The notes beneath the pieces are model-generated. The model worked only from the letters and a program-made list of their open reading frames with translations, had not been told where the DNA came from and searched no databases. From Podarcis tiliguerta (Eukaryota), in NCBI GenBank assembly GCA_965153285.1, contig OZ229125.1: a stretch of DNA of 64,000 nucleotides, one strand, 5' to 3'. The first letter of the stretch is position 1. Every line of letters starts with the position of its first letter. This document shows positions 5,245 to 47,156 of the stretch, piece by piece. The translations under genes were made by a program, and so were the position numbers.

Positions 5245-5812
5245 AATCATAGAATTGGAAGAGACCACAAGGGCCATCGAGTCCAACCCCCTGCCAAGCA
5301 GGAAACACCATCAGAGCACTCCTGACATATGGTTGTCAAGCCTCTGCTTAAAGACCTCCAAAGAAGGAGACTCCACCACACTCCCTGGCAGCAAATTCCA
5401 CTGTCGAACAGCTCTTACTGTCAGGAAGTTCTTCCTAATGTTTAGGTGGAATCTTCTTTCTTGTAGTTTGGATCCACTGCTCCGTGTCCGCTTCTCTGGA
5501 GCAGCAGAAAACAACCTTTCTCCCTCCTCTATGTGACATCCTTTTATATATTTGAACATGGCTATCATATCACCCCTTAACCTCCTCTTCTCCAGGCTAA
5601 ACATGCCCAGCTCCCTTAGCCGTTCCTCATAAGGCATCGTTTCCAGGCCTTTGACCATTTTGGTTGCCCTCCTCTGGACACGTTCCAGTTTGTCAGTGTC
5701 CTTCTTGAACTGTGGTGCCCAGAACTGGACACAGTACTCCAGGTGAGGTCTGACCAGAGCAGAATAAAAGTGGCACTATTACTTCCCTTGATCTAGATGC
5801 TATACTCCTATT
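5245..5812 (-). mobile_element. Young 5'-truncated CR1 LINE (ORF2 C-terminus and 3' UTR)
   Basis: ORF 5311-5658 [32 protein letters not shown]...WNLLP...FKQRLD is the typical CR1 ORF2 end; TTCTATGAT tail. Confidence 0.93.
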
Positions 5813-5822
5813 TGCTACTCAC

Positions 5823-5945
5823 GTCCTCCAGGACTCCGTAATAGGCTCGGATCTGGGCCTCCAGCTCGTCTTTCTTCCGCAGCAGCAGCTGCACGTCGCT
5901 GACGGAGATGCCCTTGGGCTCCGGAGCCTCGTCCTGCGCCGACAT
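5823..5945 (-). CDS. PSMD9: PSMD9 (26S proteasome assembly chaperone p27) coding exon 1
   Basis: ATG at 5945; MSAQDEAPEPKGISVSDVQLLLRKKDELEAQIRAYYGVLED then donor GTGAGT; 123 nt, phase 0; inside a CpG island. Confidence 0.95.
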
Positions 5946-8640: not shown

Positions 8641-9944
8641 CTAACAACTCTCTGTCCCCTTAACCACCTACAGTTCCCAGAATCCCTGAGGTGAAGCCAT
8701 TCCTGTTCAAAGCGTCTTCATAGCACTTCCAATGGACGGTGCGCCTAATGTGGCCTAATGTTTCCTCCCTCATTTTCTTCTCTCTCCCCACTGCCCCATC
8801 ACTTGCAATGCAGCAGATGTCCGCCTGCAGTCTTCCTTCAAAGCTCCTTCTCTCAGGTACGGCCACGGCCTTGTCCATTGTTCGCTGCCAGTATTTCGCA
8901 TTCATTTCTCCGATGTAAATAGGGACGCCCTGCGGTTCTCTTCATGACTTTGGACTTGGGGGAAACCTCACCGGCTCCGGACATCCCTGTAAGGCAAAGG
9001 CAAACAGGTGAGTGGGATGGCCCCTATCCAACAGCGTCCCCCCAGACTCCTCCTCTGTTTGGCTGCCTGTTCACAAACAAGGCTTCCAAACCACTTTGCA
9101 TCCATCTCAGCCAGCGTAGCCTCACGGCATCCACTAGTCTGAACGCAAACTCTTCCAACAACCAGCCACCAGCTGCAGTCTCGCCAGGTCCATTGCCAGA
9201 CATCAACCAGCTTCAGAGCTGAATATCCGTCACCTTCAGGTAGCGATCCCACCAGCAAGTCAACTTTGTGCTTGCCTTCTCCTTGCTTCACAGCATCCCA
9301 GCACCAGGCGATTGCCTCCTTCCACTTGTCAGCTTGCTGCCACGGGGCAGAAGACCACCAGGGCTGAGTGCCACCGAGCTGCCCATTTCTCTTTGGGGAG
9401 GGCAACTGCCGAGGCTTGTGCCTTGGCCCACATTTATGTTTTTGTGGCATCACAGTCAACCCACAGACAATGGCAGCAGCTGGGGAGGCATCACCATCAC
9501 ACCCTCAGCCCTCACAATGGGGGGGGGGGTGCAGGTCAGCAGCCAAAACACCCTCCCCCAAGTTGTGTCTATATCTGCGAAGGCCACACCGGGCACCCAA
9601 GGGGGCAAGAGGGGGACATTATTGAGCCCAGGGGCTGCATTTCCCTCCACATAACACTAGTCAAATGCACAAATGAACAGAGCAATGAAAGCAAGCCTTA
9701 TCTTTGCTGTTCAAGGAATGGCATGCAGAGAGAAAGTTAGCATCTCAGTTAAAAAGTACTTTTTCACCAATCAGTCAGTCAATCAATCATTTATTGTATT
9801 TGAGTAAAAGTCATTACAGATCCAGTTACAAAAGCATCAAACCCAAAGACCCAAACTCTAGCTCCCAGATTCATTTGCTCTTCAGATATCTGGATGCTCC
9901 TTTTTTCAGCTTGTCATAGTCTGCATTCACCACACAGAACTGAA

Positions 9945-10040
9945 AGAGGGCAGCATGGTTAAGCGTTGGATCTCCAGCTTGGACTACTACCATGCGCTCT
10001 ACGTGGGGCTGCCATTGAAGGTGACTTGGAAGTGGCAGGA
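9945..10040 (+). mobile_element. Short L2-clade LINE fragment in the pseudogene intron
   Basis: Encodes SSLDYYHALYVGLPLKVT, matching SRLDYCNVLYVGLPLKVT in the L2 at 31.4 kb. Confidence 0.7.
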
Positions 10041-10702
10041 AAGGATCTCTAATCATTCAACTTTATTGGGCTTAAAAGCAATTTTGTCAATGGCAGAAAC
10101 TCAGGGATCTATCCTGCTTATTCGGCCAGAGTTTAGAAGATTGAACTGGAGAGGAGAATGAAGAATCATAGAAGGAACCCAAGGGTCATCCAGTCCAACC
10201 CCAAATGCTGTGATCACACACACCAGGCCTTCCAAAGCTGAAGCTTATTATTCCTCCCACCAAATGGCCATTATTATTATTATTATTATTAGCCCATCTT
10301 CCATAGATTTCAGGGATGGGGCTGATGGGAGTTGGAGTCCCAACAATCTCTGCTGGACACCAGGCTCCCCATCCCTGGCCTATAAGATAACCAGCATCAT
10401 AACCCTAGTCAAGTATTTCCTGCCATACCTTGTACTGGTCGTTGGGTCACAGCTTGTTCCAAGGCTCTGGGTTGCTCTTTTTGTCCCAGCCAGGCAGAGA
10501 AACGTGACAAGAGGCAGACAGCAAGGAGTACATCTTTGGAAGAAGAAGAAAAACATACAGCATAAAGCGTAACGCTCTGCCCAACCGTTGGCACATGGTT
10601 CCCACCAAATTTAACAATCATGGCCTCCTCAGTGCCACCAGAAGAGCACTCTTCTTTTATAATGTGGGATGTAAGAAAAGGCCACCGTACCCCAAGTATT
10701 TG

Positions 10703-11030
10703 TAACCACAGAGCCTAGGGCTTGCCGATCGGAAGGTCGGCGGTTCGAATCCCTGCAATGGGGTGAGCTCCCGTTGCTCGGTCCCTGCTCCTGCCAACCT
10801 AGCAGTTCAAAAGCACATCAAAGTGCAAGTAGATAAATAGGTACCGCTCCGACGGGAAGGTAAACAGCGTTTCCGTGCGCTGCTCTGGTTCTCCAGAAGC
10901 AGCTTAGTCATGCTGGCCACATGACCCGGAAGCTGTACGCCGGCTCCCTCGGCCAATAAAGTGAGATGAGCGCTGCAACCCCAGAGTCGGTCACGACTGG
11001 ACCTAACGGTCAGGGGTCCCTTTACCTTTA
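10703..11030 (+). mobile_element. Sauria SINE, 5'-truncated
   Basis: B-box GGTTCGAATCC, AAAGTGCAAGTAGATAAATAGG core, (ACCTTT)n tail. Confidence 0.9.
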
Positions 11031-12347
11031 ATAAGGATAAAGTCCCAAGAATGCATTTCAGAACTTACGTTTTTTCTTACTTACTCCATGGCCTGATTCA
11101 CATGTAACTCTAAAACTACAGTTTATCATTGCATGCAGAAGTTTCAGGGCTGCTCCCTCTCCACTCTTCCCCCCACAAACGCACCGTCTTTCTCAATTCT
11201 GGTTAATAAATATACCTGAATCCAGATAAGTAGTGGCTTCTGGCTTATTTCAACAACAGCTCATGGTTTATGACGCTGACTTGTTATCCTAAAATGCAAG
11301 CAAAATTACACAAGTAACCAAAAGTACGATCTCTCTGCTCAGATGCTTTAGAGGTGCATTTTATCGATGTTTAAAAGTCTTTGTGGAGTGTGTTTTTCAC
11401 ATTGGTCAATGCTCTGGCTTCTCGTGGGACAAAGGGTGGTATAAAATGAAATGAAGCCAGTGGGGGGGGGGTAGTGGTCAGAGTGTTGGGCCAGGACTTC
11501 AGCCTGGAAGCTTCTTGGTCAGACAGACAGTCTCTCAACCTGGCCCTACCTCACAGGGTTATTGTGAGCATAAAGGGGGAGTGAGGGAAGAGCCATGTAT
11601 GTCTCCTTGAGTTCTTTGGAGGAAATGGGCGGCGTCAGTGGCGGGCGGTAGAAATGTAATAATAAATGAAAATAAATAGAAGATTATTTCGACGATTTCA
11701 CATATACACAGATGAGGTCTCAGCTGGCATCATGGAGTCACGGAGGAGAGCTCAATGAAAGCAGAAGACCTGCCAGGTTATCAGGGGCTGCTGGGCAAGC
11801 TCATCCCCTCCAACAGTTATCCGATGAAAATAGGGATGACCTGTTCAATAATAATAATAATCAGGTTTTTTTAGGGACACTTGGAGTGTCTGCAAGCTGC
11901 CTTCTGGGGGGGGGGGCATCTTGGCTTCACCCCCCCCCCCAGCACTTCTGCATCTGACCTGCTCAAGATATTTTGCTTCCCGAGATGAAGAACGTCATGG
12001 TGCGTCAACTGTTATAGGCACAAAAGCTTACTAGACTGGCAGTTACTTCAACGCTGGCAAAGCGCCCACATCCTCCATCACACCTGAGGGCAGCAAACTC
12101 CCTTGGGGAGGGCAGAGAGCAGACTCTGGAGCTCACACAGCCTTGGCTGCTCTCTCCCCTTCAGCATCTGCCACCTGAGGCAGCCGCTTCACTCTGCCTT
12201 GAGAAGTCTAGTTGCTTGAAATGAAAACAAGGGTGACAACAGCCTTGGCTGCCAGTGTAACGCTTTGCTGCCTAGAGTGCCACACTGCCTCCCTGGCATC
12301 CTTTAGTGCCTCCTGGACAGCAGGGACATGGGCACAGACCCCGTAGT

Positions 12348-15489: not shown

Positions 15490-15645
<156 letters not shown>

Positions 15646-17590
15646 TGAGAGAAGAAACCATTGTGGCTCAGATTTCGGAGCAGACTTACCTGATTTGCAG
15701 TGCCCCAAACAAGATGCTTACTGTGGCAAAACTTTGAAATGTTCGCTTCTCTGAATTTTGTGGTGTCTACAAAATGTGAACATTTGGGGAATGTGTTATA
15801 AGAATGCAGGTGTTTAGTGCAAACCATGTAGGAACGTGCATTGTATGGGGGTCAAATTGCTTGCAAAAAGGAGAAGGGCCTCCTGAAATGTGGCAGGTTT
15901 CCATGAGGATTATAAAACCATATCTCACATGTGAGATATGGCAAGAGGAAAAGGCTGGGAAAATGAGACAGAGGGGGAAGCCAGACTTGACAGAGTCCGT
16001 CCTCTTAATGTTGTTGGCTTTGCTGCTGTTGCACCCTTGTCCCCTTCCCAGGCACCTCACTGGGGCATCTGGTGGCCTCTGCGAGAACAGTGTGCTGGAC
16101 TGCATGGGCCCCCTTTGGCCAGATCCAGCTGCAAATCTCTTCCTGCATTTGTTTGCAATACGGAGGGCTGTGGAGGGGATGTGCTTCAGGCTGTTGCGCT
16201 ATTGGATGCCGGAGACGGGGTGGAGACCCATCTGAAAGGCCGGGTGGGAGTGGGGCAGATTTCCTGGGTAAGCTGCATTCAATTAATGGCTTGTGCCTTG
16301 CTGGCTGTGGGGGATGGGGCATTGCACTCCCAGGAATGTGGAGCTGGAATGGTCTTTGGACTAGCCTGATGCAACCGAGAGAGGGGAGAGGGGAGCCAGA
16401 TTCTTTGCTTGGTTGGCGGGGTTAGGGAGGTGCTGAGCCAAACACACACCGAGGGCTCACCCAAACCCTGGCTGAATGCCCACATTTCCCCATTCTGAAT
16501 TGTGCACTGTAGCCCCCTGTGCTTCCACACCTCCCTGGTTTGTTTGCTGCCACCACATATCTTTCTGCAAGGACCACAGGGCTTCTGCAGCCAATCCTCA
16601 CCCCTCCATGTGGCTGTTGGCATCCGTCTGTCTTGAGAGACAGTGGAGCGCAGCTCCTGGGATGAAGTCAAACTGCTGTGCTAGCAGCACCAAAGTGACT
16701 TCCCTGAGGCATAAGCCTGGGCAGTGTGTCTGGAGGTCCTGGGCTGCCCAGACAACATTAACCTTGCTGATGTGGTCCAAAGAAAAGGGAAGCAATATGT
16801 TTGACACTGGCTTGGCGGCCGGAATTGCCAGAAAGAGTCATACAAGATGTCATCCAACCACCTTAGGAACTCCGCTCCACATTTGTGGAGGGGTTAGCCC
16901 TGAGCCTTTTCTTCTGGCAAAGATATCCAGGCACCAGGCATCAGAGGTTTAGGATCAGGGTTTTGCTTCTCCTGGATGGGCTACCTTCCCAGGTTGATGA
17001 GGCCCATCAACCTCACCTTTCCTCCAACAAACTGAAAGTGATGTCCCCCACCCGCCATTTTGTTTCTTAATGATGTCATTTGCAAGCTGTAATTCAATGG
17101 AAGATGGCCCCAGAGTGGTCTATTGAAGCTATACCAAAAGAAGAAGTCAGGATCTGTTCTGAGGCTTGAAGTCTGGTATGATGCGGCGCAAAAAGGGGAA
17201 AGGGGTGAGGCAGCTCCCTAAGGGCTTTTAGCCTCCTAGGCAAGGCTGAGGGGAAGAGTGGGGATTTGAACCTTGGTCCAAACCCAATATTCTGTCACAC
17301 CGGTTCTTGCCAAGTGTCATGCCAAGATTTAAAACATCACACCAGTAGGATAAACAGGTAACGCTGTACTCAATGTTGCACTGAGCAGTTCATTGCGCAG
17401 CGCAAGGGTTTCTCCTTGTGCAACAGAACCATCTCCCCTCTGTGTCCCCCATCTGATCTGGGGGTTTCCCCTCCCTGCAGAGTGGATTTGATGGCGTAAG
17501 ATGTCCGGGGTGGGGGGGGAAGCTACCATGGCAACAATTTAGCTGGTTATGGCCCATAGTCTTAATACGTGTCTGGTGACTTACTGATAA

Positions 17591-17842
<252 letters not shown>

Positions 17843-18240
17843 TGACCTTTTTTAAAAAAAAGAAAATTTCCTGCGGAGGTAGAAGGTGTGAGAGCAAGCT
17901 TGCAAAACCAGTCCCTTTGTCTAGGCAACAGTTGTAGCTGACAACTAGTACCATGATCCACATGCCAAAGGGATAAGCTGAGCTGCAAGGGCTACAACTA
18001 AGTGATATTTCCCTCTGGGCAAATGAGTGGGTCTCCCTCTCCCCCCCCCCCGCCAGCTGCCAGGGGAAGGGAGCAATAGGCATTGCTGGGCAGAGGGCCT
18101 GCTGAAAAGCTGGAGACAGAGACATGCTTGCTCTGCGCTAAATCCAAGCTGTGACTCAAAGGATAAGCAAGATCTCCTGGGGTGTTCATGCTGTGAGCCC
18201 CTTCATCCTATGTTCAGAGTTATATATGTGTGTAGATAAA

Positions 18241-18547
18241 AGGTAAAGGGACCCCTGACCATTAGGTCCAGTCATGGACGACTCTGGGGTTGCGGCGCTC
18301 ATCTCGCTTTATTGGCCGAGGGAGCCAGTGTGCAGCTTCCGGGTCATGTGGCCAGCATGACTAAGCTGCTTCTGGCGAACCAGAGCAGCGCACGGAAACG
18401 CCGTTTACCTTCCTGCCAGAGCAGTACCTATTTATCTACTTGCACTTTGACGTGCTCTCGAACTGCTAGGTTGGCAGGAGCGCTGACCTTCTGATCGGCA
18501 AACCCTAGGCTCTGTGGTTTAACCCACAGCACCACCTGTGTCCCTTG
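18241..18547 (-). mobile_element. Sauria SINE with internal deletion, 15-bp TSD
   Basis: TSD ATGTGTGTAGATAAA at 18226-18240 and 18548-18562. Confidence 0.9.
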
Positions 18548-18930
18548 ATGTGTGTAGATAAACCATCTATAAACCATATATTCTAAAGACCCTGACTCCA
18601 AGTAAATTGAACCCTTGAACTCTCTTAGCCTTTGGAGAGTTGGGCTGGTGTGAAACAGTATTGTGAATAGGGGAGGGGGACCCACGACTGTCTTGGGTCT
18701 AGCAAAGAGAGACCAACTCTCTAATCCAGCCTTTTGCCAACGTGGTGCCCTCCGGATGTTATGGAATATTCCTGTTTTTAGCTTCCTGTTGGTTGTCTCA
18801 ATGATCTTGGATATCAACATTTTAAATGAATGCCGATGTCAGCACTTCAGCCTTTGACTCATCACTTAACCTTGTCATAAAGAAAACGAATGCTTGTAGT
18901 TATCCTGATTATTATTCTGATTACCAACAG

Positions 18931-18973
18931 ATCATATTTATCTTCTCCTCGGCTCTCAACCCTGGAAATCAAG
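18931..18973 (+). CDS. HPD: HPD exon 5
   Basis: cag|IIFIFSSALNPGNQ+G|gtaatt; 43 nt. Confidence 0.95.
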
Positions 18974-20059
18974 GTAATTCAAGAGTTGGTTCTGTTGTAA
19001 CTTTTCTTACCAAATGAGTTCCTTTTGAAACCCTGGGGGTTCTGTGTCCAGCTCCGGGGGCCACATTTTGAGACAGGCGTTGGCTCCACGCATGCCAGGT
19101 GTAGGGCAAACAGGATTGGGGGGTGGGCGGTTCTGGACTCTCAGTAAGGAATGCATTAAATTGCTGGATGTGCTTTAGCCTGGAGGAGAGCAGTTTAAGG
19201 GGAGACGTGAAAGTGGTCTTCAAATATCAGAAGGGTTGTTGCATAAAAGGTGGAACAGAGGTCTGCCAAAGGGGGAGCTGGCAGACTCCCCTCCGCAGCA
19301 CTATTTAAGCCAAGGCTGGGCAGCCGTTTGAAAGGGGCTGCTGGTGGCTTGTGTCTTGCATTGCAGATTCTGCTCTGAGCATGGGTGGTGGGGCTCAATG
19401 ACCTCCCAGGGTCTCTTTCAATGCAGTTCACTGGTTTATTTTGCTGTGCTTCAAGTTAATTTATATCCCAGTGTTACATAGATCATCTCGTTGTGCCCAG
19501 GTGTGCCATCTAGGGGAGCTGGGTGGCCGAGGGCTCACCCAAATTTTCAAGGGGTAGGTTGTGCCCCTTCAAAATTCAGTGACCCTGCGCACTGAAAGCT
19601 CTCTGATGGTCTCTGCCAGGGGTGTGGCAAGGCAAAGCATCTTCACCCTGGTGTGTCCTTTTGAGAATCACCCAGGCCCCTTCCCAGAAGACACCAAAAC
19701 AAGAGGCTGCATAAAAAAGTAGGGTGGGAGCAGAGGATGGCGGGCCAAGTTGCCATGTCTGGGGGGGGGGTGTATGTGTGATGTCACGCATGTGCGATGC
19801 CCTCCCTCCCGGCAGTGTTGGGCACAACTTGGTGCCTCTGTTCAGCCTGTAGTGTTGGCGCCTTTTGCTCCATGGAGCCATGGAAGGGGCCTGCATTGTG
19901 GTTCTTGGCCACAGTGGCTTTGTTCTCCCTCCACTGTTGGAGGCAGCACACCTTTGTTGGGAATCCCAAACGGGGAATCGTCTGCTGTGCTCATGTCCTG
20001 CCTTCAGGCTTCTTGTAGGCATCTTGGTTGGCCGTTGTGAGAACAGGATGCTGCACTAG

Positions 20060-20740
20060 AGGAGTTATTGGGACTAAAAGAAACTTGCAGACAGGACAGG
20101 GAGAAGAGTTAAGAGCCTCGGATAGAAGAGCACCAGGTTGATGAACTATACGGAACTGATAGAAAAGACTGACAAAATCCGAGACCAGGGAGAAGAGACG
20201 GTGGAAGAAGATTGGAAATTTTTAAAATATTATTTAGAGTAATATAGCATAATTAAGGAATGTTGGGAGATGGTGGAATGAACTTATATGACTTTAGTAG
20301 AAATATGATAAGGATTTAAGATTTTAGGATTTAAGATTTAAGGTTTTTTTAGATTGAAGTATAGATAAATTTTAAGATTTTGATGGGAAGATAAGGTTAA
20401 AATAGATTAAGATAATTAAACGATAGTAAGCAATGAAAGATGGAAAAGATTAGCTGACTTAATTATTAACTGGAATACAAAAAAGGGAGGTGGGGGAGGT
20501 CGAGGAAATAAGTCATTGAAGGATAGAGATGTGAAAAATGGATGTGTTTTTAAATGTTTATGTTTTTTCTCTAGTTGGGTGGAGGTATTGTTTTCTTTTT
20601 TGCTTTTCTTTTTGATGTATTTCTTAATTTTTTATTTTTCCCCCTCTTTTTTATATATATATATTGTGTTTTTTCATTTTTTATTTTTTTCCTGTAATTA
20701 TAAAACTTTTAATAAATATCATTTTTAAAAATATATATAT
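20060..20740 (+). mobile_element. L1-like LINE 3' end inserted into an older CR1-type 3' fragment
   Basis: A/G-rich ORF end, T-rich 3' UTR, AATAAA and AT tail; flanks gagaacaggatgctgcactaga / attggcctgatccag join into one repeat similar to those near 30055-30115 and 48650-48720. Confidence 0.6.
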
Positions 20741-21053
20741 ATTGGCCTGATCCAGTGGCTAGGCCCTTCTCATGTTCCATGTTCTTCACAACCCATCAGT
20801 GGTGCCATAGGTGCCCTCTCGCACCGGATAATGTGGGTGCCCGCAACGAAGGGCTTCGACTTCACCCATGGACTTTGGAGTGGCTCAGCCCCCAAATATA
20901 TTGTTGTGGGAGCTGAAGCACCCACGGCTCCCTAGAGTGAGCTCCAGTGAGAGGTGCTTTAATATCATAAGGACTGATCCAGCCAAAGGGATACCCTGTC
21001 CAGCCCCCAGTTTCTCTTCACGGCCAACCAGATGCCTCTGGGAAGCCCTCAAG

Positions 21054-21388
21054 CACGGCCGTCTTTCCCATAGGGCTTAGTGGTGCATCGTGCCAGGGCG
21101 CCAGCCTCTCAGGGGCACCCCAGCAAGTGGGGGAGCTGCGTGGCTTTGCCGGTGGCCTCCCCTTTCCCTGCATGCCCGCCAGCTGCACCCCGCCAACCAT
21201 ATGGCTGGCGGGCGTGCAGCTTGTCTCCCAAGCCTCCGCGAGGATTGCTCTCCTGCAGCGGCATGGGGGAGAGTTGCGCCCCCCGATGGCTGGCAGTGCG
21301 CAGCTTCAGCCCACCCCCATCTGTGGTAATTTGGGGGTGCTGGGCGGATATTTGCACCCCGGCGCCACATCTGCTAAAGACAGCCCTG
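21054..21388. mobile_element. hAT MITE, perfect TSD
   Basis: TSD CCCTCAAG at 21046-21053 and 21389-21396; right end resembles that of the 12348-13209 element. Confidence 0.88.
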
Positions 21389-21689
21389 CCCTCAAGCAGC
21401 CTGGCATGGTGGCTGTGGGCCTCTCCCTCCTGTTTTCTTTCTGCGTTCTCTGATGGGCCTTGACGGCTGGATTCAGGGTCACCACGTCTGCCAGTTCCTC
21501 AGCTGGAGTTTTTACCAGGGTTATATGCAGCCCCTTGGCAGGACTTCAAATGCAGGTTTCTCCTTGTCTCAGGGGAGAGATGGAGGCTCCTTTGCTCTTA
21601 AAGGACAATGCAGTTAATTCACTAGCACAGGTAATTCGCTGTGCCTGACTAAGACACAGCTGGCGTGCAATGTTCTAAGGTACACCGCC

Positions 21690-21983
21690 CAGTGGCGTAG
21701 GGTGGGGGGTGCAGGGGGGGCCAGCCGCACCGGGCGCAACATCTGGGGGGGCGCACTCACACTCGCAGCTCTCTGCCCCTACCTGGCTCACTCACTCTCT
21801 CTCACTGCAGTGCTGGCTGTGCGAATCTGATCCGAGCTGCCGGGTCGCCGCCCACTGTGGAGGTGGGGGGGGGGGGTGCCAGGCGTGCGGTGCGGTGCGG
21901 AGAGAGAGCGAGGGACAATCTGGGTTAGGGGGCACAAATTACTTGCCTTGCCCCGGGTGCTGACAACCCACGCTACGCCACTG
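21690..21983 (+). mobile_element. Young GC-rich hAT MITE, copy A (HPD intron 5)
   Basis: TIRs CAGTGGCGTAG / CTACGCCACTG; TSD ACACCGCC at 21682-21689 and 21984-21991. Confidence 0.92.
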
Positions 21984-22034
21984 ACACCGCCTCTGACTAT
22001 AGAGGTTTCATCTTTTTTGGCCAATAGCAGTTGA

Positions 22035-22184
<150 letters not shown>

Positions 22185-22221
22185 TGAGGAGGGTCTCTGT
22201 GTGACTTGAGAGGCTTGCTAG

Positions 22222-22371
<150 letters not shown>

Positions 22372-22563
22372 TAAGAGGCTTTCACCTATAAACTGCATTT
22401 GGACAGACTCAGAAAATGATAATACTAATAGGCAGTTGTTGTTAGACAGTGGAACGGACTGGACTCTCCTTCCTTGGAGGTTTCTTAAGCAGAGGTTAAA
22501 TGGTCATCTGTCAGGGATACATTACAGGGGGTCGGACTAAACTCTGCGACAGTGAATAATAAA

Positions 22564-22898
22564 CAGTGGCGTAGCGTGGGTTGTCAGCACCCGGGGCAAG
22601 GCAAGTAATTTGCGCCCCCTAACCCGGGGCAAGGCAAGTAATTTGCGCCCCCCCCCCGCTGCACTGTCCCTCCCCCAGATAGTCCCTCGCTCTCTCTCCG
22701 CACCGCACTGCACGCCTGGCACCCTCCCCTCCAGTGGGCGGCGACCCGGCGGCTCGGATCGGATTCGCACAGCCAGCACTGCAGTGAGAGAGAGTGAGTG
22801 AGCCAGGTAGGGGCAGAGAGCTGCGAGTGCGAGCGCCCCCCCCAGATGTTGCGCCCGGTGCTGCCGGCCCCCTCTGCACCCCCCACGCTACGCCACTG
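22564..22898 (-). mobile_element. Same hAT MITE family, copy B, inverted relative to A (HPD intron 7)
   Basis: Reverse-complement match to copy A; TSD ATAATAAA / TTAATAAA; internal tandem duplication of about 33 bp. Confidence 0.92.
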
Positions 22899-23079
22899 TT
22901 AATAAATAAATAGGATTTATGTAGCATGTTTTCTAGGCACTTTGTTTTTATTTTATCAAAAACCCTTAAAACAAGCCTATCTTCTTAGCCTCATGTTTCT
23001 GAACTGGAGACTGAGAGAAATTACTAGACTTCTTCAGCCTCAAGAAGAAGCTGTGCAGTTAGCCAAAGGTAGTGATTAA

Positions 23080-23349
23080 TGTATAGAGTCAGAGGTCCTG
23101 TTTGCCATTGAAATACACTTGGAGTTCTGTAGTGACTTCATGCTCTTTATTGCAGCTTGTAAAACAGTGATTGAATTCCCCCAAAACCTCAGGCCTTTAT
23201 AGATATTATTTACACAATGAGTCCCGTCTGATTGGCTGATTCTGCTTCCCTCCTGGAGCCTGATTGGTCTTTTCCTGCAGGCTAATCAGTTGTTGCATTC
23301 TAGGATCCTACTTGCCTATTGTTCTAGGATCCAAGCTTAGTACATAACA
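23080..23349 (-). mobile_element. Possible solo LTR
   Basis: Minus strand starts TGTTATGTA, has CCAAT boxes, TATAAA, AATAAA and ends in CA; no TSD recognised. Confidence 0.45.
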
Positions 23350-23356
23350 CCATATA

Positions 23357-23714
23357 CAGTGGTGCCCCGCAAGACGAATGCCTCGCAAGACGGAAAACCC
23401 GCAAGACGAAAGGGTTTTCCGTTTTTCGATGCGCTTCGCAGGACGAATTTCTCTATGGGCTTGCTTCGCAAGACGAAAATGCCTTGCGAGTCTTGAGATT
23501 TTTTTTCGCTCCCCACCCCCTTTTTCTAAGCCGCTAAACCGCTAATAGCCTTTTAGCAGCTAATCCGCTAATCCTTTAAGCCGCTAATAGCCGCTAATAG
23601 CCGCTAAACCGCTAATAGCGCTAATCCGCTAATAGGGTTGCTTCGCAAGACGAAAAAACCGCTAGACGAAGAGACTCGCAGAACGAATTAATTTCGTCTT
23701 GCGAGGCATCACTG
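23357..23714. mobile_element. Tigger/pogo-like MITE
   Basis: TA TSDs; TIRs CAGTGGTGCCCCGCAAGACGAA / TTCGTCTTGCGAGGCATCACTG; internal GCAAGACGAA and GCCGCTAA repeats. Confidence 0.92.
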
Positions 23715-24308
23715 TACATTTAAAACAGCATCATGGCACTTTAATTAGTCATGGTGCCCTCCCCCCCCCCAATTACAAAAGCATCCTGGGAAGTGTAGTT
23801 TAAGGGTGTTGAATAGCTGTTCTGGAGGTGCCTATTCCCCTCACAGAACTACAATTCTCAACTCCACAATTAAATAATCCCTCCCTCTTCCCATGGATTT
23901 CTGGGAGTTGTAGGCCTGTGAGGGGAATCAGAGTCTCCTCATACGTAACTCTTCCCCTGCATGCGAAGACAGGCTCTGGTCAAAGGAGCAGACAAGACCA
24001 GGAGTAGCTCCAACAGTCAAGAAAGCGGTTTCTGCACACGCTGTAGAGGGAAGTGAGGGGAAGGGGGGAGCAAGGAAGCAGCTGCCCCCCCCAAACAAGT
24101 AAATAAATAAAAACACCTAACTAAAAGTAGAAATTGTGGAAAGATTTTGACAGATTTTCCTGAGCGTTTGGGGTCAAAAGAAAGTCATTTAAAACAACTG
24201 TTGCTGAGATTTGGCAGAAATCAATAAAACAAGTTTTGGGGGCAGGGAGTCAGCTCACTAGAGTGATATTAAAACGTTGCACTTTCCTCTTCCTCCTCCT
24301 CCATCTAG

Positions 24309-24413
<105 letters not shown>

Positions 24414-24789
24414 TAAGTACCAGCCCTTAATGCTCTGCTTAAACTCTAGCGTGAAAGATCTGAGTCTCATTTGAGACTGGGTGCCATTCCACACACTTAG
24501 ATTTGCCACTGGGATTGTTCAACCAGCAAGGAGCTAGTCCTGGCCATTTCTGAGTGTCATTCCCACATTACACTTTTAGATAATCTTTTCTCTCTCTTCC
24601 CCTCCCCACTGCACACAGGTTAGCACAGTGTCCCCACTGGAAGTTGTTATCCTTCTAGGTACACACTTCAGACAAGCTTAAGCGTACACCTGAATCAAAA
24701 CAAAAATCATGCTCAAAGAACCTTTGGTGACTTTCATCAGAGAGAGTTTGATGTCAAACAGTGAGACCCAGGCGGCTGATACTTTCGGT

Positions 24790-25680
24790 ATACATAATCA
24801 ATAATAACATATTCAAATCAACCATATGTACAATTTTATATACATTAACACTTCTCCATCCACAAGGTTTATTTAACTTTTAACATTTTAATGGCCCCAA
24901 ATTGTTCAAACCTACCCAAATAATTCAATATCTTCTCAAACCAATCCTCCTCTTTCTCACTGACCTGAAACCCTTTCATGCTATATCTTCACAGTTACTG
25001 TAGATATTCTAAAATTATAATATTATTCAGTTTTTTTCCTCCATTGGTTCACCCCAGCTCTTCTGCATTTTTCCAATTACTCGCTATAACCTGTCTGGCT
25101 GCAGTCACCATCAATTTTACCCATTTACATTCCTCTTTTGTTTTTAACTTGGTACTACTCAGACTAATGGGACGCGGGTGGCGCTGTGGGTTAAAGCCTC
25201 AGTGCCTAGGGCTTGCCGATCGAAAGGTTGGCGGTTCGAATCCCCGCGGCGGGGTGCGCTCCCGCTGTTCGGTCCCAGCGCCTGCCAACCTAGCAGTTCG
25301 AAAGCACCCCTGGTGCAAGTAGATAAATAGGGACCGCTTACTAGCGGGAAGGTAAACGGCGTTTCCGTGTGCAGCTCTGGCTCGCCAGAGCAGCGATGTC
25401 ACGCTGGCCACGTGACCCGGAAGTGTCTTCGGACAGCGCTGGCCCTTGGCCTCTAGAGTGAGATGGGCGCACAACCCTAGAGTCTGTCAAGACTGGCCCG
25501 TACGGGCAGGGGTACCTTTACCTTTACCTTACTCAGACTAATAAGAACCATTAATTTAGATAGTCCCACCTTCCTACCCACAATTCCCGATATTTCTATA
25601 CCAATCTGTTTCCAAAATTCATTAACTAACGGACAATCCCACCACATATGACTGTATGTTCCCATCACTCCACATTTCCT
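24790..25680 (-). mobile_element. L1/Tx1-like ORF2 3' remnant interrupted by a Sauria SINE
   Basis: GTYSHMWWDCPLVNEFWKQI (HxWWxC motif of L1-clade ORF2); continues past the SINE as AARQVIASNWK; boundaries approximate. Confidence 0.7.
25169..25529 (+). mobile_element. Full-length Sauria SINE, 13-bp TSD
   Basis: GGGACGCGGGTGGCGCTG head, (ACCTTT)n tail; TSD TACTCAGACTAAT at 25156-25168 and 25530-25542. Confidence 0.93.
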
Positions 25681-26131
25681 GATTTTATTTTATTTATTTT
25701 TTTATTGCATCAACATCCAACTTTTTCTCTCTCTAAGGAGTTCAAGGTGGCATCCCTTGTTCTCTCTGCTGCTCATTTAATCCTCACAACCACCCTGTGA
25801 GGTAGGCTAGGCTGAGGGGAATGACTGGCCCAAGGCCACTCAGGGAACTTCATGACCAAGTTGCTGGACTCACAGATTCTATGCTGACACTCTAGCAGGA
25901 CACCACACTGGCTTATGGGGAACCCTTTGTGTAAAGGGAGATTAACCCCTGAAAGGCGGACAAGAGCTTAATTTGCAAATGGGTTGCTGAGATACTTCAG
26001 ATGGGCCTTTGGCAACAGGCTTCTCTTGCCTATACATTTTTCTCTGGAAAGAGTTAATGGGGGTGGGAGGGTCTGAGGCCAACTTGTCTGCATGAGAAGT
26101 ACTCATCCCGCAAAAAACACTGTGGAGGTAA

Positions 26132-26245
<114 letters not shown>

Positions 26246-27673
26246 TAAAGATTGCTTTTGGAAATCAACTTAAGGGAAGAATTGCTTTCCTTCTAGAACA
26301 TGAAATTTCCTCGATGACAACACAGGACATTTAGAGCAGCCATGGGGACCCCGGATGTTGTGGGCCTGATCAATCTAAATCCCTGATGCAGAGGAACTGA
26401 TTTTAGGACATTTATTATGGGCAGCCTTTACAACATGATACGTACGTACGCAAACACGCATCCAGGGTGTGGGGTCCCCAACTGAGTCTTCTTCGATCCA
26501 GGTGACACGAAGCCTCATTTCAGCCCTGCTCATAGACCATCCTCTCCTGGGGATTTGCATACCCACCAGCCCAGCATGTGGGGGATGGGGAGGAAGGAAG
26601 GGGGGCTGACCGTCTCCTTGGCTCTGCTCAAGGGAACGTGGCCCAGAGGATGCGGGCAGCTGGGCCTCGACTGTGGCTTTATCAGCGGGGATATCAAAGG
26701 GCAATAGCTATGATGGCTAACATTGATCTTCAGGTCCATCTACTCTATTCCTCAGAATGCCAGCTGCTGGAGACAATCAGCTGTTGGCTTCCTGTCCTGC
26801 ATGAGGATTTCCCAGAATAATCTGGTTAACTGCTGCTGGGACCATTAGGTTGGACAACTGTGCTGCCTGGGGCTTGATGGGAGTTGCAGTCCAAAACATC
26901 TGGAGGTTTGGAGAAGAGTGGACTAGATGGACTTTTGATGTGATCTCGCTTAGCTGCCTGGAGATCCACCCCCCTCGCTCCCCCTCCCATTAGCTGATTT
27001 TTAAATGGAATTTCCAAGGCAAATGCAATTATAAACATCCACAGAGCAGATCCCCTCTCCCTTCCCTCTTTGAGCTCCCAAGCAAGCAGCCTGCATTCCA
27101 GCCACGGTTCCATAGACCCAGAGCTGCAACTCTGGAAGGAAGATCAACAGCCTCTGTAGACCAGTCTCCCTCTGTGCAGTGGCTGGCCATGGCTTTCCAG
27201 GGGATTAGATGGGAGTCTTCCCCAGCCATATCTGACGATACTAGGGATTGAGTCTGGGGTCTTTGTAAGCAAAGTACGTGTGGTGCCTCCTCTAAAAACA
27301 AAGGAGGTCTCTAGTCCTCACTGTTCTGAATAAAGGATTGAATTAGATAGAAACTGCTTTCGACAGAGTTAGACCGTTGGCCCATCCACCTGGTTTGGTA
27401 CTGTGCAACCCTGACTGGCAGTGACTCTCTGCCTGGACATATCAGGGGTTGAAGGTGGGTGCAGGAGCAGGTGCTCTACACCTGAGCTATGGGCTCTTCA
27501 CAAAAGAAACAGATGGCAGTCAGAGCCGGAAGCTGCTCAGATAGCTCTTGCTACCTTGCTGCATCTCCTTGTTGCAACTTTTTAATTCTTCAGTCATTAA
27601 TTCTTCAAAATAATGTTTGTGAATGCATCTAGACTCCACCCAGGATGTTCTCTAAGAATATAATCGTGGCTAA

Positions 27674-27922
<249 letters not shown>

Positions 27923-28583
27923 TGAGTGGCCAGAGTTGAGCCTCGAGCCAGGGCAGAGGAACAGGCAGAGACACACCAGGCCAAACAGGAAGCCTTTCAC
28001 CATCCTCCAGTGGCCAACCTAGGGAGATGGTTCCATCTCAGAGCCTCAGGATGCTTGGTCCCTGGGAAGGCATTGCCACCTGCAATTCCGATTGCGTGCT
28101 ACCAGGTGCAGCTGCCCCCTAGAGAAGAAGGTGCCAGTTTCTACCTCCAGTGGCTTGTAGCATAAATTTGTTTTAGGGGGTGCCAACTGCTTTGGGGGCT
28201 CTGGGCATTTGGCATGCTGGGGAAACTCTGGGGTGCAACAGAGAGAGAGAGAGAGAGAGATGCATATTCTATTGGCTGCAATGGAATGCCTCAAGCCTCA
28301 TTTAATTGGGGGAGGGGGACCCTTTGACACACACCCCAGGAAGCTCTTTATGGGCACATGGTGTGCCATGCTGGTGACCGCCTGAGTTATTTGGCCTCTT
28401 CAGTACAAGCCCTGCCCATCCCAATGCATTTGCCTATTGAATCCTTCCTCTAAGGAGGTTGAGACTGTGTTGCGGTGTGGATTTCCTTTAAGCAAGGAGC
28501 GTTGACTTTGTGGACTGCTTCTTCCCTGGTGCAAGGTGGAAACATTTCTCGATAATCGGGTCTTTGGCTGATTGACAATTTAT

Positions 28584-28838
28584 AGCCAGCGTGGTGTAGT
28601 GGTTAAGAGCGGTGGACTCGTAATCTGGTGAACCGGGTTCACGTCTCCGCTCCTCCACATGCAGCTGCTGGGTGACCTTGGGCCAGTCACACTTCTCTGA
28701 AGTCTCTCAGCCCCACTCACCTCACAGAGTGTTTGTTGTGGGGAAGGAAGGGAAATGAGAATGTTAGCCGCTTTGAGACTCCTTCAGGTAGTGATAAAGC
28801 GGGATATCAAATCCAAACTCTTCTTCTCTTCTTCTTCT
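28584..28838 (+). mobile_element. tRNA-derived SINE (Squam3-like), HPD intron 10
   Basis: Near-identical to 14936-15195. Confidence 0.85.
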
Positions 28839-29441
28839 ATATCCTTTTAAATGTGTTTATGGGAGGGGGTTATTGGTTTGATTTTGTTTTATTAGGTATT
28901 TTGTGTTCTCATCTTGTATTTTTATGCTGTAAACTGCATGTGATTTTAAGATGAGGGCTGTGTGTGTGTGTTTGATTTGATTTTTTAAAAAATCCACAAT
29001 ACGGTAAAAATTTCCTGTACTGTGAAAATACAAAAGAATCTGACTAGAGCAGCTGTCATTAGTGATGGCCATGTAGAGATTCATCAAAACAGTGGTAAGA
29101 GCACATGTTCCCACCCCACCACTCTGGGTAAACCCTGTTTATTCCTCCCGTGTTTGGATGCAGTGAGACAAGTGCTAATCACAATGCAATCCAGCACACT
29201 TCTGCTCAGAAATAAGACCCACTGAGTTCCATGGAGCATACTCCCAAGTAAGTGTGTCAAGGATTACAGCCTAGGATTACAAGAGGGTAAGGCAGGAGAT
29301 GAAGGCTGTTAAGGACTACTACCCACAATGACGTATTTTTCTCTCCTCCCCTCAAGGTGGTCTACAAAGTTCTCCCTCTTCTCACTTAATCCCCACAACA
29401 GTCTTGCTAGGTTGAGGTCGCAAAGTGAGCTTCATGGCTGA

Positions 29442-29657
<216 letters not shown>

Positions 29658-29675
29658 TGATCAGTCTACCAGTAA

Positions 29676-29918
<243 letters not shown>

Positions 29919-30629
29919 TAGACTGGGACTTCATCATGCAGTGCATTGTTAAACTATGGAACTTGCTGCCACAGGAGGCAGCGATGGCCATCAACTTGGG
30001 TGGCTTTAAAAGAGGATGGGACAAATTCAGCGGCTACTAGTCCTGGGGGCTGAACAGGAGGCTGAACTAGATGGCCCATTGGCCTGATGAAACAGGGTTT
30101 TCTTATGTTCTTACCAACTGGCGAGGCATGAAGTCAAATCCCTACTCATCTATGAAGCTTGGTGGGTGACCTTGAAATAACCACTAGTTCCAAGTTGTGG
30201 TGGGAGCAAAACAGAAAGGTTAAGAACCAGATACTCCCCTTGGAGGATCTTGGATAGAAATACAATACAAATGCAACCAAATACTTTAGCAGCTGCTCAA
30301 CTTGATGAGTTTCACATTGGGAAGGGGGTTGTGGCAGTTCCCATGTAATGTGCAAGACCACCAACCTTTAAGGTGGGGCTGGCTATCCTGTGACCCCCCT
30401 CCCAAGGCCCTTGGACTCCAAGCTCTCACCAGCCCCAGCCAGCATGGCCCAACGCTGGAGATGGAGTCCAGCAACATCTGGAGAGCCACAGGTGAACCCC
30501 ATACCAGCTTTGAGGGCATCACTTCCTGGTGCAGCTGGCGTTCTCCATGACCCTTTCCCTCTGCAGGGAGGTGGGACTGATTTGGATGGTCAGACTCCGC
30601 CACTTAATGGATCCAAATGGTTTCCAAAG

Positions 30630-32312
<1,683 letters not shown>

Positions 32313-41665: not shown

Positions 41666-42289
41666 GCTAAACAGGTATGAGGAGCAGGGGAGGGAAATCA
41701 AAACTGAAGAGCCAACCATCAGTCACCTCCTTGTATAAGACAGCATGAGCCTGAGGATTGTGGGAAACAGAGAGGCCACTGGAGTGGGAAGGTCCACCCA
41801 CCCACCCACCCACCCACATGGACTCTCTACCCCTACAAGTTTGTTGCCCCACTGTGATGACAGTTGGAGCCACCAGGGGACACAAAAATGAATTGGGGGG
41901 TGGGGGTGGGGAGGTGACAGGGGCTTGGAAAGGGGAGACGCTGCCACGACCCGGGTGACGCCAGGGAGAAACGCCCAATTTTGAATGGATCTCTCAGGGC
42001 CATCCACTTGCACCTGCCTGCAGTTGAGATAAAGCCAGGACACAGGGTGAGCCTGTGGCAAAGCGGTGGGTGTCTTCCATCCCTCTGCACATGGGGATGA
42101 GGCCTTGCCACAAGAAGATTGTGGGCTTGGCAGCAGCAACTGCAGTGAGGGAAAAACCAGGACCAGGGCAGCCCTCAGCAGCTGGTAATGGAGAGCAGAG
42201 GAAGAGGTGGTGTTGGGGGTGGCAGCATTGCGTCCTGGACGCTTTGCTTTGATGACACCCCCCGCCTGCCCCTGCTAACAACAGCCCTA

Positions 42290-42784
<495 letters not shown>

Positions 42785-43492
42785 TCAGTATTTTGCTGCT
42801 CACCATTTTATAAAGACCCTCCATGGCTGAAAGTAGAAAGATTTCAAAAGGTAAACACAGAGAGCAGCATTTTCACAGAGATACTGGCATAGGAGACGGC
42901 AATACAGCCGACTCACAAGTTGTGTGTATTTGACTAGTGTGGTTGCAGTTGTATGTGTCTGGCAGCTGGCCAGAACTCAACCGCACAAATTAAACACAGC
43001 AAGGCAGACAACATAAAAGCTCTTTCCGTGCCAATCCCATGCAATACCTTCCCAGAGCCCAGGGATCAGGACTGAAGCAGCCACCTTGGGCTGCAAAATC
43101 TTGTAAGGTGGCACCCCACCCACCCAGCTCAGTGTTGACAGCAGCAGCTTCTGATTAGAACTCGCAGAACTCTCACAACAACTCACAGAGCTTGTGAGAT
43201 CTCACATGAAATCTTGCGAGAGTTCTGCATCATCTGGTGAGAAGCAGCATCTTCTTGTTTCACCTCAGGTGTCAAAATGGGGTGGGCCACCCATGCTGGT
43301 AAGCAAAGCAGAAAGCTTAAAAGATCTCCACTTTGCATGGGGGGGGGGGCAAGGCCCACTTGGAAAAGTAAGAATGGCCGAAGGGGGCAGTTCTGGGGTT
43401 GTCATTGCTGCTGTAGAGAACAACGCATGTATCAGACCTTCAATCAGTAAATAAAGCATTTTAAACTTTCTGAACGTCGTGTGGTCTGTTTA

Positions 43493-43930
<438 letters not shown>

Positions 43931-44334
43931 TCAGAAGATCCATTTCTAAATAAGCCGAAACCACGTTTTAGAGGCTGCTTAGCTTGGGCCATGGCAGCCA
44001 GTGGCCCTTCCTGCCACACTTCCCATTTTAATGCTACTTTATCAGAGTAACAGAAAACAGAGAGACATGTAGAATATAAAATAATGGCAGTCCGTAAAAA
44101 CTAATATGGAGTTACTTGAAGAGAACAGGCAATCCTGTTTGATATAACTTGTTCTTCACAGGCCATCTCCAGGGTGTGAGGAACTGCATTAAAGCCAACA
44201 TGGTAATTCGGAACAAAACTACAGTCATGAGTTTTCCAAAGTCATTTAGATTATTTAATTGCCATTTTATTCCCTGCTTGTGTAAATAATAAAACTGTTG
44301 GTTCAAACAGTTTTGTCCTTTCAAGATTTGCAGC

Positions 44335-44730
44335 CAAGATGATCAAGGGTCTGGAAACCAGGCCTTATGAGAAATGGTTGAAGGAGCCGAGTACGTTTAA
44401 CTTGGAAAAGAGGAAACTGAGAGGAAATAGGATAGCCATCTTCAACTATCTCAAGGGCCCCCATATGGAGGAGGGAGCAAGCTTGTTTTCTTCAGCTCTG
44501 GAGGGGAGGAGTCGAACCAATGGCTTCGACAAGAAGATTCTGACTAAACAGCAGGAAGAACTTTCTGACAGTATGAGCTGTTTGACAGTGGAAAGGACTC
44601 GCTTGGTAGACTCTCCTTCCTTGGAGGTTTCGAAGCAGAGGTTGGATGGCCATCTATCATGGATGCTTTAGCTGGAACTCTTGCGTTGCAAATGACCATT
44701 CCAACTCTGCAATTCCACAGTTCTATTATT
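44335..44730 (+). mobile_element. CR1 3' fragment
   Basis: MIKGLETRPYEKWLKEPSTFNLEKRKLRG...SPSLEVSKQRLDGHLS. Confidence 0.85.
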
Positions 44731-44803
44731 TTGGGTGAGTTTTTCATTTAGGGCCCCTGCCACACTTCAGTATACAAATAAGTTGAATTGGAACTCCTTT
44801 AAA

Positions 44804-45151
44804 GGTAAAGGGACCCCTGACCATTAGGTCCAGTCATGACCCACTCTGGGATTGCGGCGCTCATCTCGCTTTATTGGCCGAGGGAGCCAGTGTACAGCTT
44901 CCGGGTCATGTGGCCAGCATGACTAAGCCGCTTCTAGCGAACCAGAGCAGCGCACGGAAATGCTGTTTACCTTCCCGCCGGAGCGGTACCTATTTATCTA
45001 CTTGCACTTTGAGGTGCTTTCGAATTGATAGGTTGGCAGGAGCAGGGACCGAGCAACGGGAGCTCACCCCGTCATGGGGATTCAAACCGCCAACCTTCTG
45101 ATCGGCAAGCCCTAGGCTCTGTGGTTTAACCCACAGCGCCACCCGCGTCCC
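44804..45151 (-). mobile_element. Full-length Sauria SINE, 15-bp TSD
   Basis: TSD TGGAACTCCTTTAAA at 44789-44803 and 45152-45166. Confidence 0.93.

Positions 45152-47116: not shown

Positions 47117-47156
<40 letters not shown>

What the first reader, a model, noticed from the sequence alone, without database searches (positions are those of the whole stretch)
9871..11840. Hidden intron-containing NDUFA4/COXFA4-family gene remnant between PSMD9 and HPD
Seen on the minus strand: 10489-10429 encodes WDKKSNPEPWNKL*PNDQYK with an intact donor AAG|GTATGG. After a 489-bp intron, an intact acceptor TTTCAG| leads to FCVVNADYDKLKK. Removing one base from the A6 run (9901-9906) restores KKEHPDI*. A decayed exon 2 (VIPIFIG..., ending near PD...TG|GCAGGT) lies at 11840-11774. 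Known: these motifs and intron positions match NDUFA4 and NDUFA4L2 (WDRKNNPEPWN.L.PNDQYK | F...N.DY.KLKK.RPDF), members of the swappable complex IV subunit family with C15orf48. None of the three human genes lies in the HPD-PSMD9 interval as far as I know. Inference: the introns show this is not a retrocopy. It is a genomic paralog, possibly an old extra family member still functional in other reptiles, birds, amphibians or fish, that died in this lineage.
Basis: partly seen in the sequence, partly recalled or inferred. Interest (0 to 1): 0.8.

Follow-up and report, generated by a model that had tools for sequence, protein, structure and literature searches.

The report
Dead NDUFA4-like gene with introns

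Summary
On the minus strand, 10488-10429 reads WDKKSNPEPWNKL*PNDQYK and is followed by GTATGG. After a 489-nt GT..AG intron, 9939 onward reads FCVVNADYDKLKK. An A6 run (9901-9906) then shifts the frame away from KKEHPDI*. Family-derived degenerate patterns hit each exon once with 0 mismatches, where chance predicts about 0. PDB and Pfam name only NDUFA4/B12D. A decayed exon 2 (IPIFIG, 11840-11774) is also non-random.

The flanks are confirmed: PSMD9 (minus, exon 1 at 5945-5823), HPD (plus, from about 15.5 kb) and SETD1B. The best PSMD9 match is Podarcis lilfordi at 98%, so the window comes from a lacertid lizard.

The gene is dead. It has an in-frame TGA, a frameshift shared by three species, no AG at the intron-2 acceptor, and a destroyed transmembrane exon.

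Stranded RNA from a sister species covers only the coding core (depth 49 at 9932/9935). Depth is 0 at 9894/9895 and in the 3'UTR, although that species' own DNA matches there. The reads therefore cross-map from an expressed relative about 90% identical in the core. That favours a younger DNA-level duplicate over an ancient fourth paralogue.

No tree was built.

The parts
9790..9795 (-). AATAAA polyadenylation signal, about 75-90 nt after the two possible stop codons. The 3'UTR is short.
9871..9939 (-). Exon 4 remnant, FCVVNADYDKLKK. It then reads GASRYLKSK* in the present frame and KKEHPDI* (stop 9884-9882) in the frame one base over.
9901..9906 (-). A6 run that shifts the frame away from the family's C-terminus. 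It is the same length in short-read contigs of three species, so it is not an assembly slip.
   Evidence: Contigs X1 record 4, X5 record 12 and X6 record 21 differ in length only by a 2-nt deletion at 9968.
9940..10428 (-). Intron 3, 489 nt, GT..AG, phase 0. It contains interspersed-repeat fragments at 9970-10031 and 10270-10377 and an (AAT)n run.
10429..10488 (-). Exon 3 remnant, WDKKSNPEPWNKL*PNDQYK, with an in-frame TGA at 10449-10447.
10489..11773 (-). Intron 2, 1285 nt. There is no AG at the expected acceptor. The nearest AG is at 10535-10534, behind a strong pyrimidine tract. A SINE sits at 10704-11032.
   Evidence: One search shows very high word depth at 10650-11049.
11774..11840 (-). 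Exon 2 remnant, with acceptor TTGAACAG| and translation VIPIFIG*LLEGMSLPSSP**. It has stops, is about 17 nt shorter than expected, and has lost the transmembrane helix.
   Evidence: X1 contig record 8 covers it at single-copy depth.
11959..11998 (-). Possible exon 1 remnant, ATG..MTFFISGSKIS* followed by CAG|GTCAGA. This is weak and rests on inspection only.
   Evidence: not tested further
5823..5945 (-). PSMD9 exon 1 (flanking gene). Further exons lie at 4630-4496, 1991-1797 and 1201-1091.
15530..32312 (+). HPD (flanking gene, head to head with the remnant). Recognised exons are at about 15.5 kb ([19 protein letters not shown]), 17666-17750 (residues 40-67) and 27725-27905 (residues 200-260), with more up to 32.3 kb.

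Best explanation
This is an unprocessed pseudogene of the NDUFA4/COXFA4 family, meaning a copy made at the DNA level that kept its introns. NDUFA4 is the small single-pass subunit of cytochrome c oxidase.

Position: it lies on the minus strand, 3.8 kb upstream of the PSMD9 start and at most 3.5 kb from the HPD start, in a lacertid lizard.

Why it cannot make a working subunit:
- The exon that should encode the membrane helix is truncated and holds stop codons.
- The intron-2 acceptor AG is missing.
- Exon 3 has an in-frame TGA where the family has glycine.
- An extra A in exon 4 replaces the conserved ...KKERPD[FI] end.

Shown: its identity, its introns, its lesions and its flanking genes. Also shown: the exon-4 frameshift is shared by three species, and the window's allele carries further derived amino-acid changes (Y>C, A>V, R>H).

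Inferred: the locus itself is silent. The RNA reads that land on it come from an expressed relative elsewhere in the genome that is about 90% identical in the coding core. The copy therefore arose by a DNA-level duplication within squamate or lacertid history, tens of millions of years ago rather than hundreds. It then decayed before organisms A, B and C split.
For: Identity:
- Searches give unique zero-mismatch hits to family patterns.
- Searches return only NDUFA4 and B12D.
- One search finds the exon-2 motif once.

Introns and lesions.

Flanks and host: (Podarcis lilfordi PSMD9, 98%), (SET domain of the next gene).

Shared frameshift: contigs of organisms A, B and C across 9798-10024 differ in length from the window only by a 2-nt deletion at 9968.

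Derived changes: one search shows 9935 C>T, 9932 A>G and 9895/9894 T>C/A>G in all three species. On the minus strand these turn the window's C, V and H back into Y, A and R.

Evidence for an expressed relative, all:
- The library is stranded. The PSMD9 exon 1 bin has depth 80.9 versus 0.
- 49 reads cover 9932/9935, all in the minus-strand-RNA orientation.
- Depth is about 32 at exon 3.
- Depth is 0 at 9894/9895 and 0 in the bin 9650-9849.
- Organism B's own DNA contig runs 9805-9994 at 96% identity.
- The cleanest read still has 7 differences.
- The exon-2 bin has depth about 1.

The literature knows three vertebrate paralogues with the same four-exon plan (PMC7793259, PMC8654286).
Against: - The parent gene was never seen. 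Its existence and its roughly 90% identity are inferred from where the RNA reads start and stop. The joint and loose-end rows for these reads were crowded out by repeats.
- The age estimate rests on a core of about 96 nt and on my recollection of the human coding sequence (about 76% identical) as a yardstick.
- Gene conversion between old paralogues could mimic a young age.
- No other genome's PSMD9-HPD interval could be inspected.
- The state of the TGA in organisms B and C is unknown.
- Exon 2 is far more decayed than exons 3 and 4. A single young duplication does not explain that by itself.
Confidence: 0.6

Rival explanations
1. It is a unitary pseudogene of an ancient fourth NDUFA4-family paralogue. 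That paralogue would have arisen before amniotes, or even in early vertebrates, always lived between PSMD9 and HPD, and died in this lineage.
For: The copy has introns and sits in a conserved gene neighbourhood, PSMD9-HPD-SETD1B, far from where the three known human genes lie (from memory). No paper describes such a copy, so it would have gone unnoticed. The heavy decay of exon 2 suggests a long time dead.
Against: RNA of a sister species matches the core at about 90% nucleotide identity but does not come from the orthologous locus. Paralogues hundreds of millions of years old should be about 75-80% identical here. Exons 3 and 4 are almost pristine, and the splice sites of intron 3 are intact. 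That fits poorly with a very old death.
Confidence: 0.2
2. The gene at this locus is alive and expressed in related species, or on another haplotype, with a changed C-terminus (..KLKKGAPRYLKSK). Only the window's allele is broken.
For: One search supports this in three ways. Minus-strand, exon-restricted RNA carries the same Y and A states as the relatives' DNA. The window's allele is derived at four sites within 42 nt. Sample X1 of organism A holds a second form, 4-5% different, at 9844-10024 and at 11256-11427.
Against: RNA depth is 0 at 9894/9895 and across the 3'UTR, although organism B's genomic contig matches there at 96%. The exon-2 bin has almost no RNA. No protein containing these exon peptides turned up in the word search, which does hold Podarcis proteins and transcript-derived proteins. 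That blank is weak evidence.
Confidence: 0.12
3. It is a chance resemblance or an assembly artefact.
For: Each exon is short. Pfam scores the exon-3 piece below its cut-off. The exon-4 piece alone finds nothing in the PDB.
Against: Three collinear pieces lie on one strand in the right order. Splice signals sit at the family's exon limits. Each piece is unique in the window, with chance expectation of 0.015 or less. Short-read contigs of three species cover the same sequence.
Confidence: 0.01

Closest known systems
NDUFA4 (COXFA4, MISTR1), the loosely bound 14th subunit of cytochrome c oxidase
   Same: The only PDB matches are NDUFA4 chains. The WD[RK]K.NPEPWNKL.PNDQYK | F..VN.DY.KLKK(E.PD.) half is nearly identical. 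There is a phase-0 intron between ..QYK and F... The KLGP and FY states, the latter in the relatives' allele, resemble NDUFA4 more than human NDUFA4L2 (from memory).
   Different: It is broken by a stop, a frameshift, a lost acceptor and a destroyed helix exon. It lies between PSMD9 and HPD rather than in the NDUFA4 neighbourhood (from memory: human 7p21). It has tiny introns and a roughly 90-nt 3'UTR. The core of the miR-147b/miR-210 site that PMC7793259 reports as conserved down to fish is absent.
NDUFA4L2 (COXFA4L2, MISTRH), the hypoxia-induced paralogue
   Same: Same family and same exon plan. Its compact gene with short introns (from memory) resembles the small original introns here. The moderate depth of the cross-mapping RNA would suit a weakly expressed paralogue.
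   Different: Several residues fit NDUFA4 better. The human gene lies at 12q13, next to SHMT2 and STAC3, not at the HPD locus (from memory). No lizard NDUFA4L2 sequence was available to compare.
C15orf48 (COXFA4L3, MISTRAV)
   Same: It has the same four-exon plan (PMC8654286) and carries the NPEPW motif.
   Different: The C-terminal half of C15orf48 is unlike this sequence (from memory). No miR-147 hairpin, nor any other Rfam family, is present in the window.
Human NDUFA4P1 and NDUFA4P2, processed pseudogenes
   Same: They are dead copies of the same family.
   Different: Those are intronless retrocopies (from memory). This copy keeps GT..AG introns at the family's positions.

Membership tests
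NDUFA4/COXFA4 family (Pfam B12D, PF06522) | Match to the B12D profile or to solved NDUFA4 chains | tested here: inconclusive
The exon-3 piece alone scores 17.8 bits against B12D, below the 21.5 cut-off (E 0.002). The only PDB hits are four NDUFA4 sequences, best E 0.0017.
NDUFA4/COXFA4 family (Pfam B12D, PF06522) | Conserved C-terminal half: WD[RK]..NPEPWN.L.PNDQYK then F..VN.DY.KLKK | tested here: met
   Degenerate patterns hit once each with 0 mismatches, chance about 0. The motif itself is from memory, supported by the PDB alignments.
NDUFA4/COXFA4 family (Pfam B12D, PF06522) | Four-exon plan with conserved exon limits | tested here: met
   Intron 3 is GT..AG, phase 0, between K and F. An acceptor sits one codon before IPIFIG. 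PMC8654286 states that the family shares exon limits. The exact human limits are from memory. The intron-2 acceptor is missing.
NDUFA4/COXFA4 family (Pfam B12D, PF06522) | Single-pass membrane helix and an open frame of about 80-90 codons | tested here: not met
   Exon 2 has TAA, TGA and TAA stops and is about 17 nt short. There is a TGA in exon 3 and a frameshift in exon 4. It is therefore a pseudogene, not a working member.
NDUFA4 proper (MISTR1) | miR-147b/miR-210 response element in the 3'UTR (PMC7793259) | tested here: not met
   There is no CGCACA within 2.9 kb downstream on the minus strand. The hexamer was derived from the two seed sequences as I remember them.
C15orf48 | miR-147b hairpin in the last exon (PMC8654286) | tested here: not met
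   No Rfam family reaches its gathering score anywhere in the window.
Processed pseudogene (retrocopy) | No introns, with a poly(A) remnant | tested here: not met
   Introns of 489 nt and 1285 nt are present at the family's positions.
Unprocessed (duplicated) pseudogene | Introns kept together with disabling lesions | tested here: met
Unprocessed (duplicated) pseudogene | A closely similar working parent elsewhere in the genome | tested here: inconclusive
   This is inferred from RNA reads that match only the coding core, with depth 49 at 9932 and 0 at 9894 and in the 3'UTR. The parent itself was not seen.
Unitary pseudogene of an ancient paralogue | Intact orthologue at the same place in other vertebrate lineages | not testable with these tools
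The other collections hold no vertebrate genomes.

The most novel reading that the evidence does not exclude
Lacertid lizards, or squamates more widely, may carry a fourth working member of the swappable NDUFA4/COXFA4 subunit family. It would be moderately expressed and distinct from canonical NDUFA4. The PSMD9-HPD copy would then be either its dead sister or the dead original. In the strongest form, the locus marks an old vertebrate paralogue that survives in some lineages.
Probability: 0.2. Interest if true: 0.6.

Novelty: new member of a known kind. Interest (0 to 1): 0.3.

Why it matters
NDUFA4, NDUFA4L2 and C15orf48 are exchanged in cytochrome c oxidase under hypoxia and inflammation, and the literature counts exactly three vertebrate members. 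A further intron-bearing copy shows that the family has duplicated again at the DNA level in lizards.

As a dead copy it is mainly of use for annotation. It can attract cross-mapping RNA reads, as seen here. If its expressed close relative proves to be an extra working isoform rather than NDUFA4 itself, that would add a lineage-specific subunit variant worth testing in reptile respiration.

Tried and rejected
- Word search with the stop-free 56-aa frame around exon 3 and the 61-aa frame around exon 4: both blank. The same tool found 211 PSMD9 proteins, so vertebrates are in the collection. Four to nine shared words in a row were evidently too few. These blanks say little.
- PDB search with the exon-4 piece: nothing at E up to 10.
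- Pfam on single HPD exons: nothing. The PDB search then confirmed HPD.
- The search of protein representatives: not run. Scaling (21.7 bits, E 0.0017 in 177,635 sequences) to 1.84 billion sequences gives E of about 18, so a 14-residue match could not surface.
- The protein-atlas search: not used, because the family is known.
- My first reading, that the locus is transcribed in organism B, is rejected. RNA depth is 0 at 9894/9895 and in the 3'UTR.
- Zebrafish ndufa4l as a candidate fourth paralogue is rejected. It is a teleost duplicate of NDUFA4 (bioRxiv 10.1101/483784).
- In read laying I chose a 6-kb stretch to include PSMD9 exon 1 as an RNA control. The repeats in that stretch crowded out the rows for the exon-3 stop, the exon 3-4 joint and the loose ends.
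- No contig was taken for human, and no N stretch was touched.
Full report
**What is there.** On the minus strand, 10488-10429 translates to WDKKSNPEPWNKL, a TGA at 10449-10447, then PNDQYK. This is followed at once by GTATGG. Exactly 489 nt further on, CTCTTTCAG precedes 9939, from which the frame reads FCVVNADYDKLKK. A run of six A (9901-9906) then leads into GASRYLKSK*, while the frame one base over reads KKEHPDI*. About 1.3 kb upstream, behind the acceptor TTGAACAG, 11840-11774 reads VIPIFIG*LLEGMSLPSSP**.

**Is it more than chance?**
- The exon-3 piece alone finds only NDUFA4 chains among 177,635 PDB sequences (best E 0.0017, aligned to SWDRKNNPEPWNKL). It also finds only Pfam B12D, below the cut-off because just 13 residues are available.
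- A degenerate back-translation of NPEPWNKLxPNDQYK plus GT hits once in the window with no mismatch, and in none of 100 shuffles.
- AG plus FxxVNxDYxKLKK also hits once with no mismatch, with 0.01 expected.
- The helix-start motif IP[LIMV]F.{0,2}IG occurs once in all six frames, at 11837 on the minus strand, with 0.015 expected.
- Three collinear pieces on one strand, each bounded by splice signals, cannot be coincidence.
- The exon-4 piece by itself is too short to score in the PDB.

**Surroundings and host.**
- PSMD9 lies on the minus strand, with exon 1 at 5945-5823 and further exons at 4630-4496, 1991-1797 and 1201-1091.
- Its best match is Podarcis lilfordi PSMD9 at 98%, followed by other squamates. 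The window is therefore from a lacertid lizard.
- HPD lies on the plus strand. Its residues 40-67 sit at 17666-17750 and residues 200-260 at 27725-27905. An earlier exon sits at about 15.5 kb.
- A SET-domain gene follows on the minus strand at 42 kb and beyond. By its sequence I take it for SETD1B.
- The remnant is thus head to head with HPD, at most 3.5 kb away, and ends 3.8 kb upstream of the PSMD9 start.

**State of the gene.** It is dead several times over.
- Exon 2 holds three stops and is about 17 nt shorter than a family exon 2, so the membrane helix is gone.
- There is no AG in front of the W codon. The nearest AG is at 10535-10534, behind a strong pyrimidine tract.
- Exon 3 has a TGA where the family has glycine.
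- Exon 4 has the extra A.

Intron 3 still has intact splice sites. An AATAAA stands at 9795-9790. Intron 2 carries a 330-nt SINE (10704-11032), and intron 3 carries repeat fragments. The original gene was therefore very compact. A possible exon 1 (11998-11959, MTFFISGSKIS*, donor CAG|GTCAGA) is only a guess.

**What the reads add.** Runs of seven coded species hold the stretch. I laid DNA contigs of organism A (X1), B (X5) and C (X6), and stranded RNA of B (X23).

First, contigs of all three species across 9798-10024 differ in length from the window only by a 2-nt deletion at 9968. The A6 run is therefore real, not a homopolymer slip, and is older than the split of these species.

Second, all three carry 9935 T, 9932 G and 9895/9894 C/G. 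On the minus strand these turn the window's Cys, Val and His into Tyr, Ala and Arg, which are the family's usual residues. The window's allele has thus added four changes, all altering the amino acid, and none silent in the family's frame. That is what relaxed constraint looks like.

Third, the RNA. The library is stranded: the PSMD9 exon 1 bin shows 80.9 on one orientation and 0 on the other. In the same orientation, 49 reads cover 9932/9935 and about 32 cover exon 3, while the introns are near zero.

I first took this for transcription of the locus. It is not. RNA depth is 0 at 9894/9895 and 0 in the whole bin 9650-9849. Yet organism B's own genomic contig matches the window from 9805 to 9994 at 96%. 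Reads from B's orthologue would have to run on into the 3'UTR.

The reads are therefore clipped between 9896 and 9931 on one side. On the other side many are clipped at 10480. The cleanest read still carries 7 differences, and the exon-2 bin has a depth of about 1.

The simplest reading is that they come from a spliced mRNA of a relative elsewhere in the genome. That relative would be about 90% identical to this copy over the roughly 96-nt coding core and unlike it outside the core. With 7 or more differences, a read can reach the 90% threshold only if it is laid on both exons. The source is therefore spliced at the same place.

**Age.** As I remember the human NDUFA4 coding sequence, it is only about 76% identical to this core. 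Paralogues that split in early vertebrates should be no closer than that. About 90% identity leaves only a handful of silent differences, because several of the differences are amino-acid changes on the dead copy's own branch. This points to a duplication tens of millions of years old rather than hundreds. It is an inference from one short stretch and from clipped reads. Gene conversion could mimic it, and I could not see the parent gene.

**What is known.** Two papers on this family describe three vertebrate paralogues (NDUFA4, NDUFA4L2, C15orf48) with the same four-exon plan (PMC7793259; PMC8654286). Zebrafish ndufa4l is a teleost duplicate of NDUFA4 (10.1101/483784). Searches for NDUFA4 together with lizard, Podarcis, or PSMD9 and HPD found nothing relevant. 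The remnant lacks the core of the miR-147b/miR-210 site of NDUFA4 and has no miR-147 hairpin.

**What could not be done.**
- The decisive test is to look at the PSMD9-HPD interval of other squamates, turtles, birds, amphibians and fish.
- The word search returned nothing for either exon frame.
- The large HMMER search would have given E of about 18 for the best possible match, so I did not spend it.

**Verdict.** It is an ordinary duplicated pseudogene in an unrecorded place. The proposal that it is an ancient fourth paralogue is not excluded, but it is the less likely reading. The earlier notes of this scan hold only this same finding.

Noticed in passing
window 9844-10024 and 11256-11427 (run X1, organism A): The same sample holds two forms of this locus that differ by 4-5%. 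One is identical to the window and the other resembles organisms B and C. This could be a very divergent (introgressed?) haplotype or a second genomic copy.
   Followed up: no
window 10704-11032; other copies near 18312-18494 and 25199-25474: A tRNA-derived squamate SINE sits in intron 2 and in HPD introns. It takes up nearly all laid DNA and RNA reads (word depth about 3e7).
   Followed up: partly
window 8650-9050: There is low but one-sided RNA coverage of organism B (depth 4-6, minus-strand RNA orientation) between the remnant and the PSMD9 start. 7 reads share 8898 G>A and 8900 A>G.
   Followed up: no
window 10450-10617, minus strand: The frame stays open for 56 codons upstream of the TGA. 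From the AG at 10535-10534 it reads MYSLLSASCHVSLPG before WDKK, which is faintly like the family's LYLLRLALFNPDV. This may be chance, or a second trace of the end of exon 2.
   Followed up: partly
window 11906-11940: An 11-G run and an 11-C run, 13 nt apart, form a perfect hairpin-prone pair inside the putative intron 1.
   Followed up: no
window 42287-60313, minus strand: A large gene with a SET domain and long proline-rich exons follows HPD. I take it for SETD1B, which completes the conserved order SETD1B-HPD-PSMD9.
   Followed up: partly
window 5311-5658 and 44339-44671: These are open frames with the C-terminal signature of a reptile or bird LINE (..[22 protein letters not shown]..). One lies in PSMD9 intron 1. 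Pfam gives no hit.
   Followed up: partly
tool behaviour: the search for homologous proteins holds vertebrate proteins but returned no candidate for frames that share 4 consecutive 5-residue words with the PDB NDUFA4 chains. A blank for such short conserved cores is not evidence of absence.
   Followed up: no
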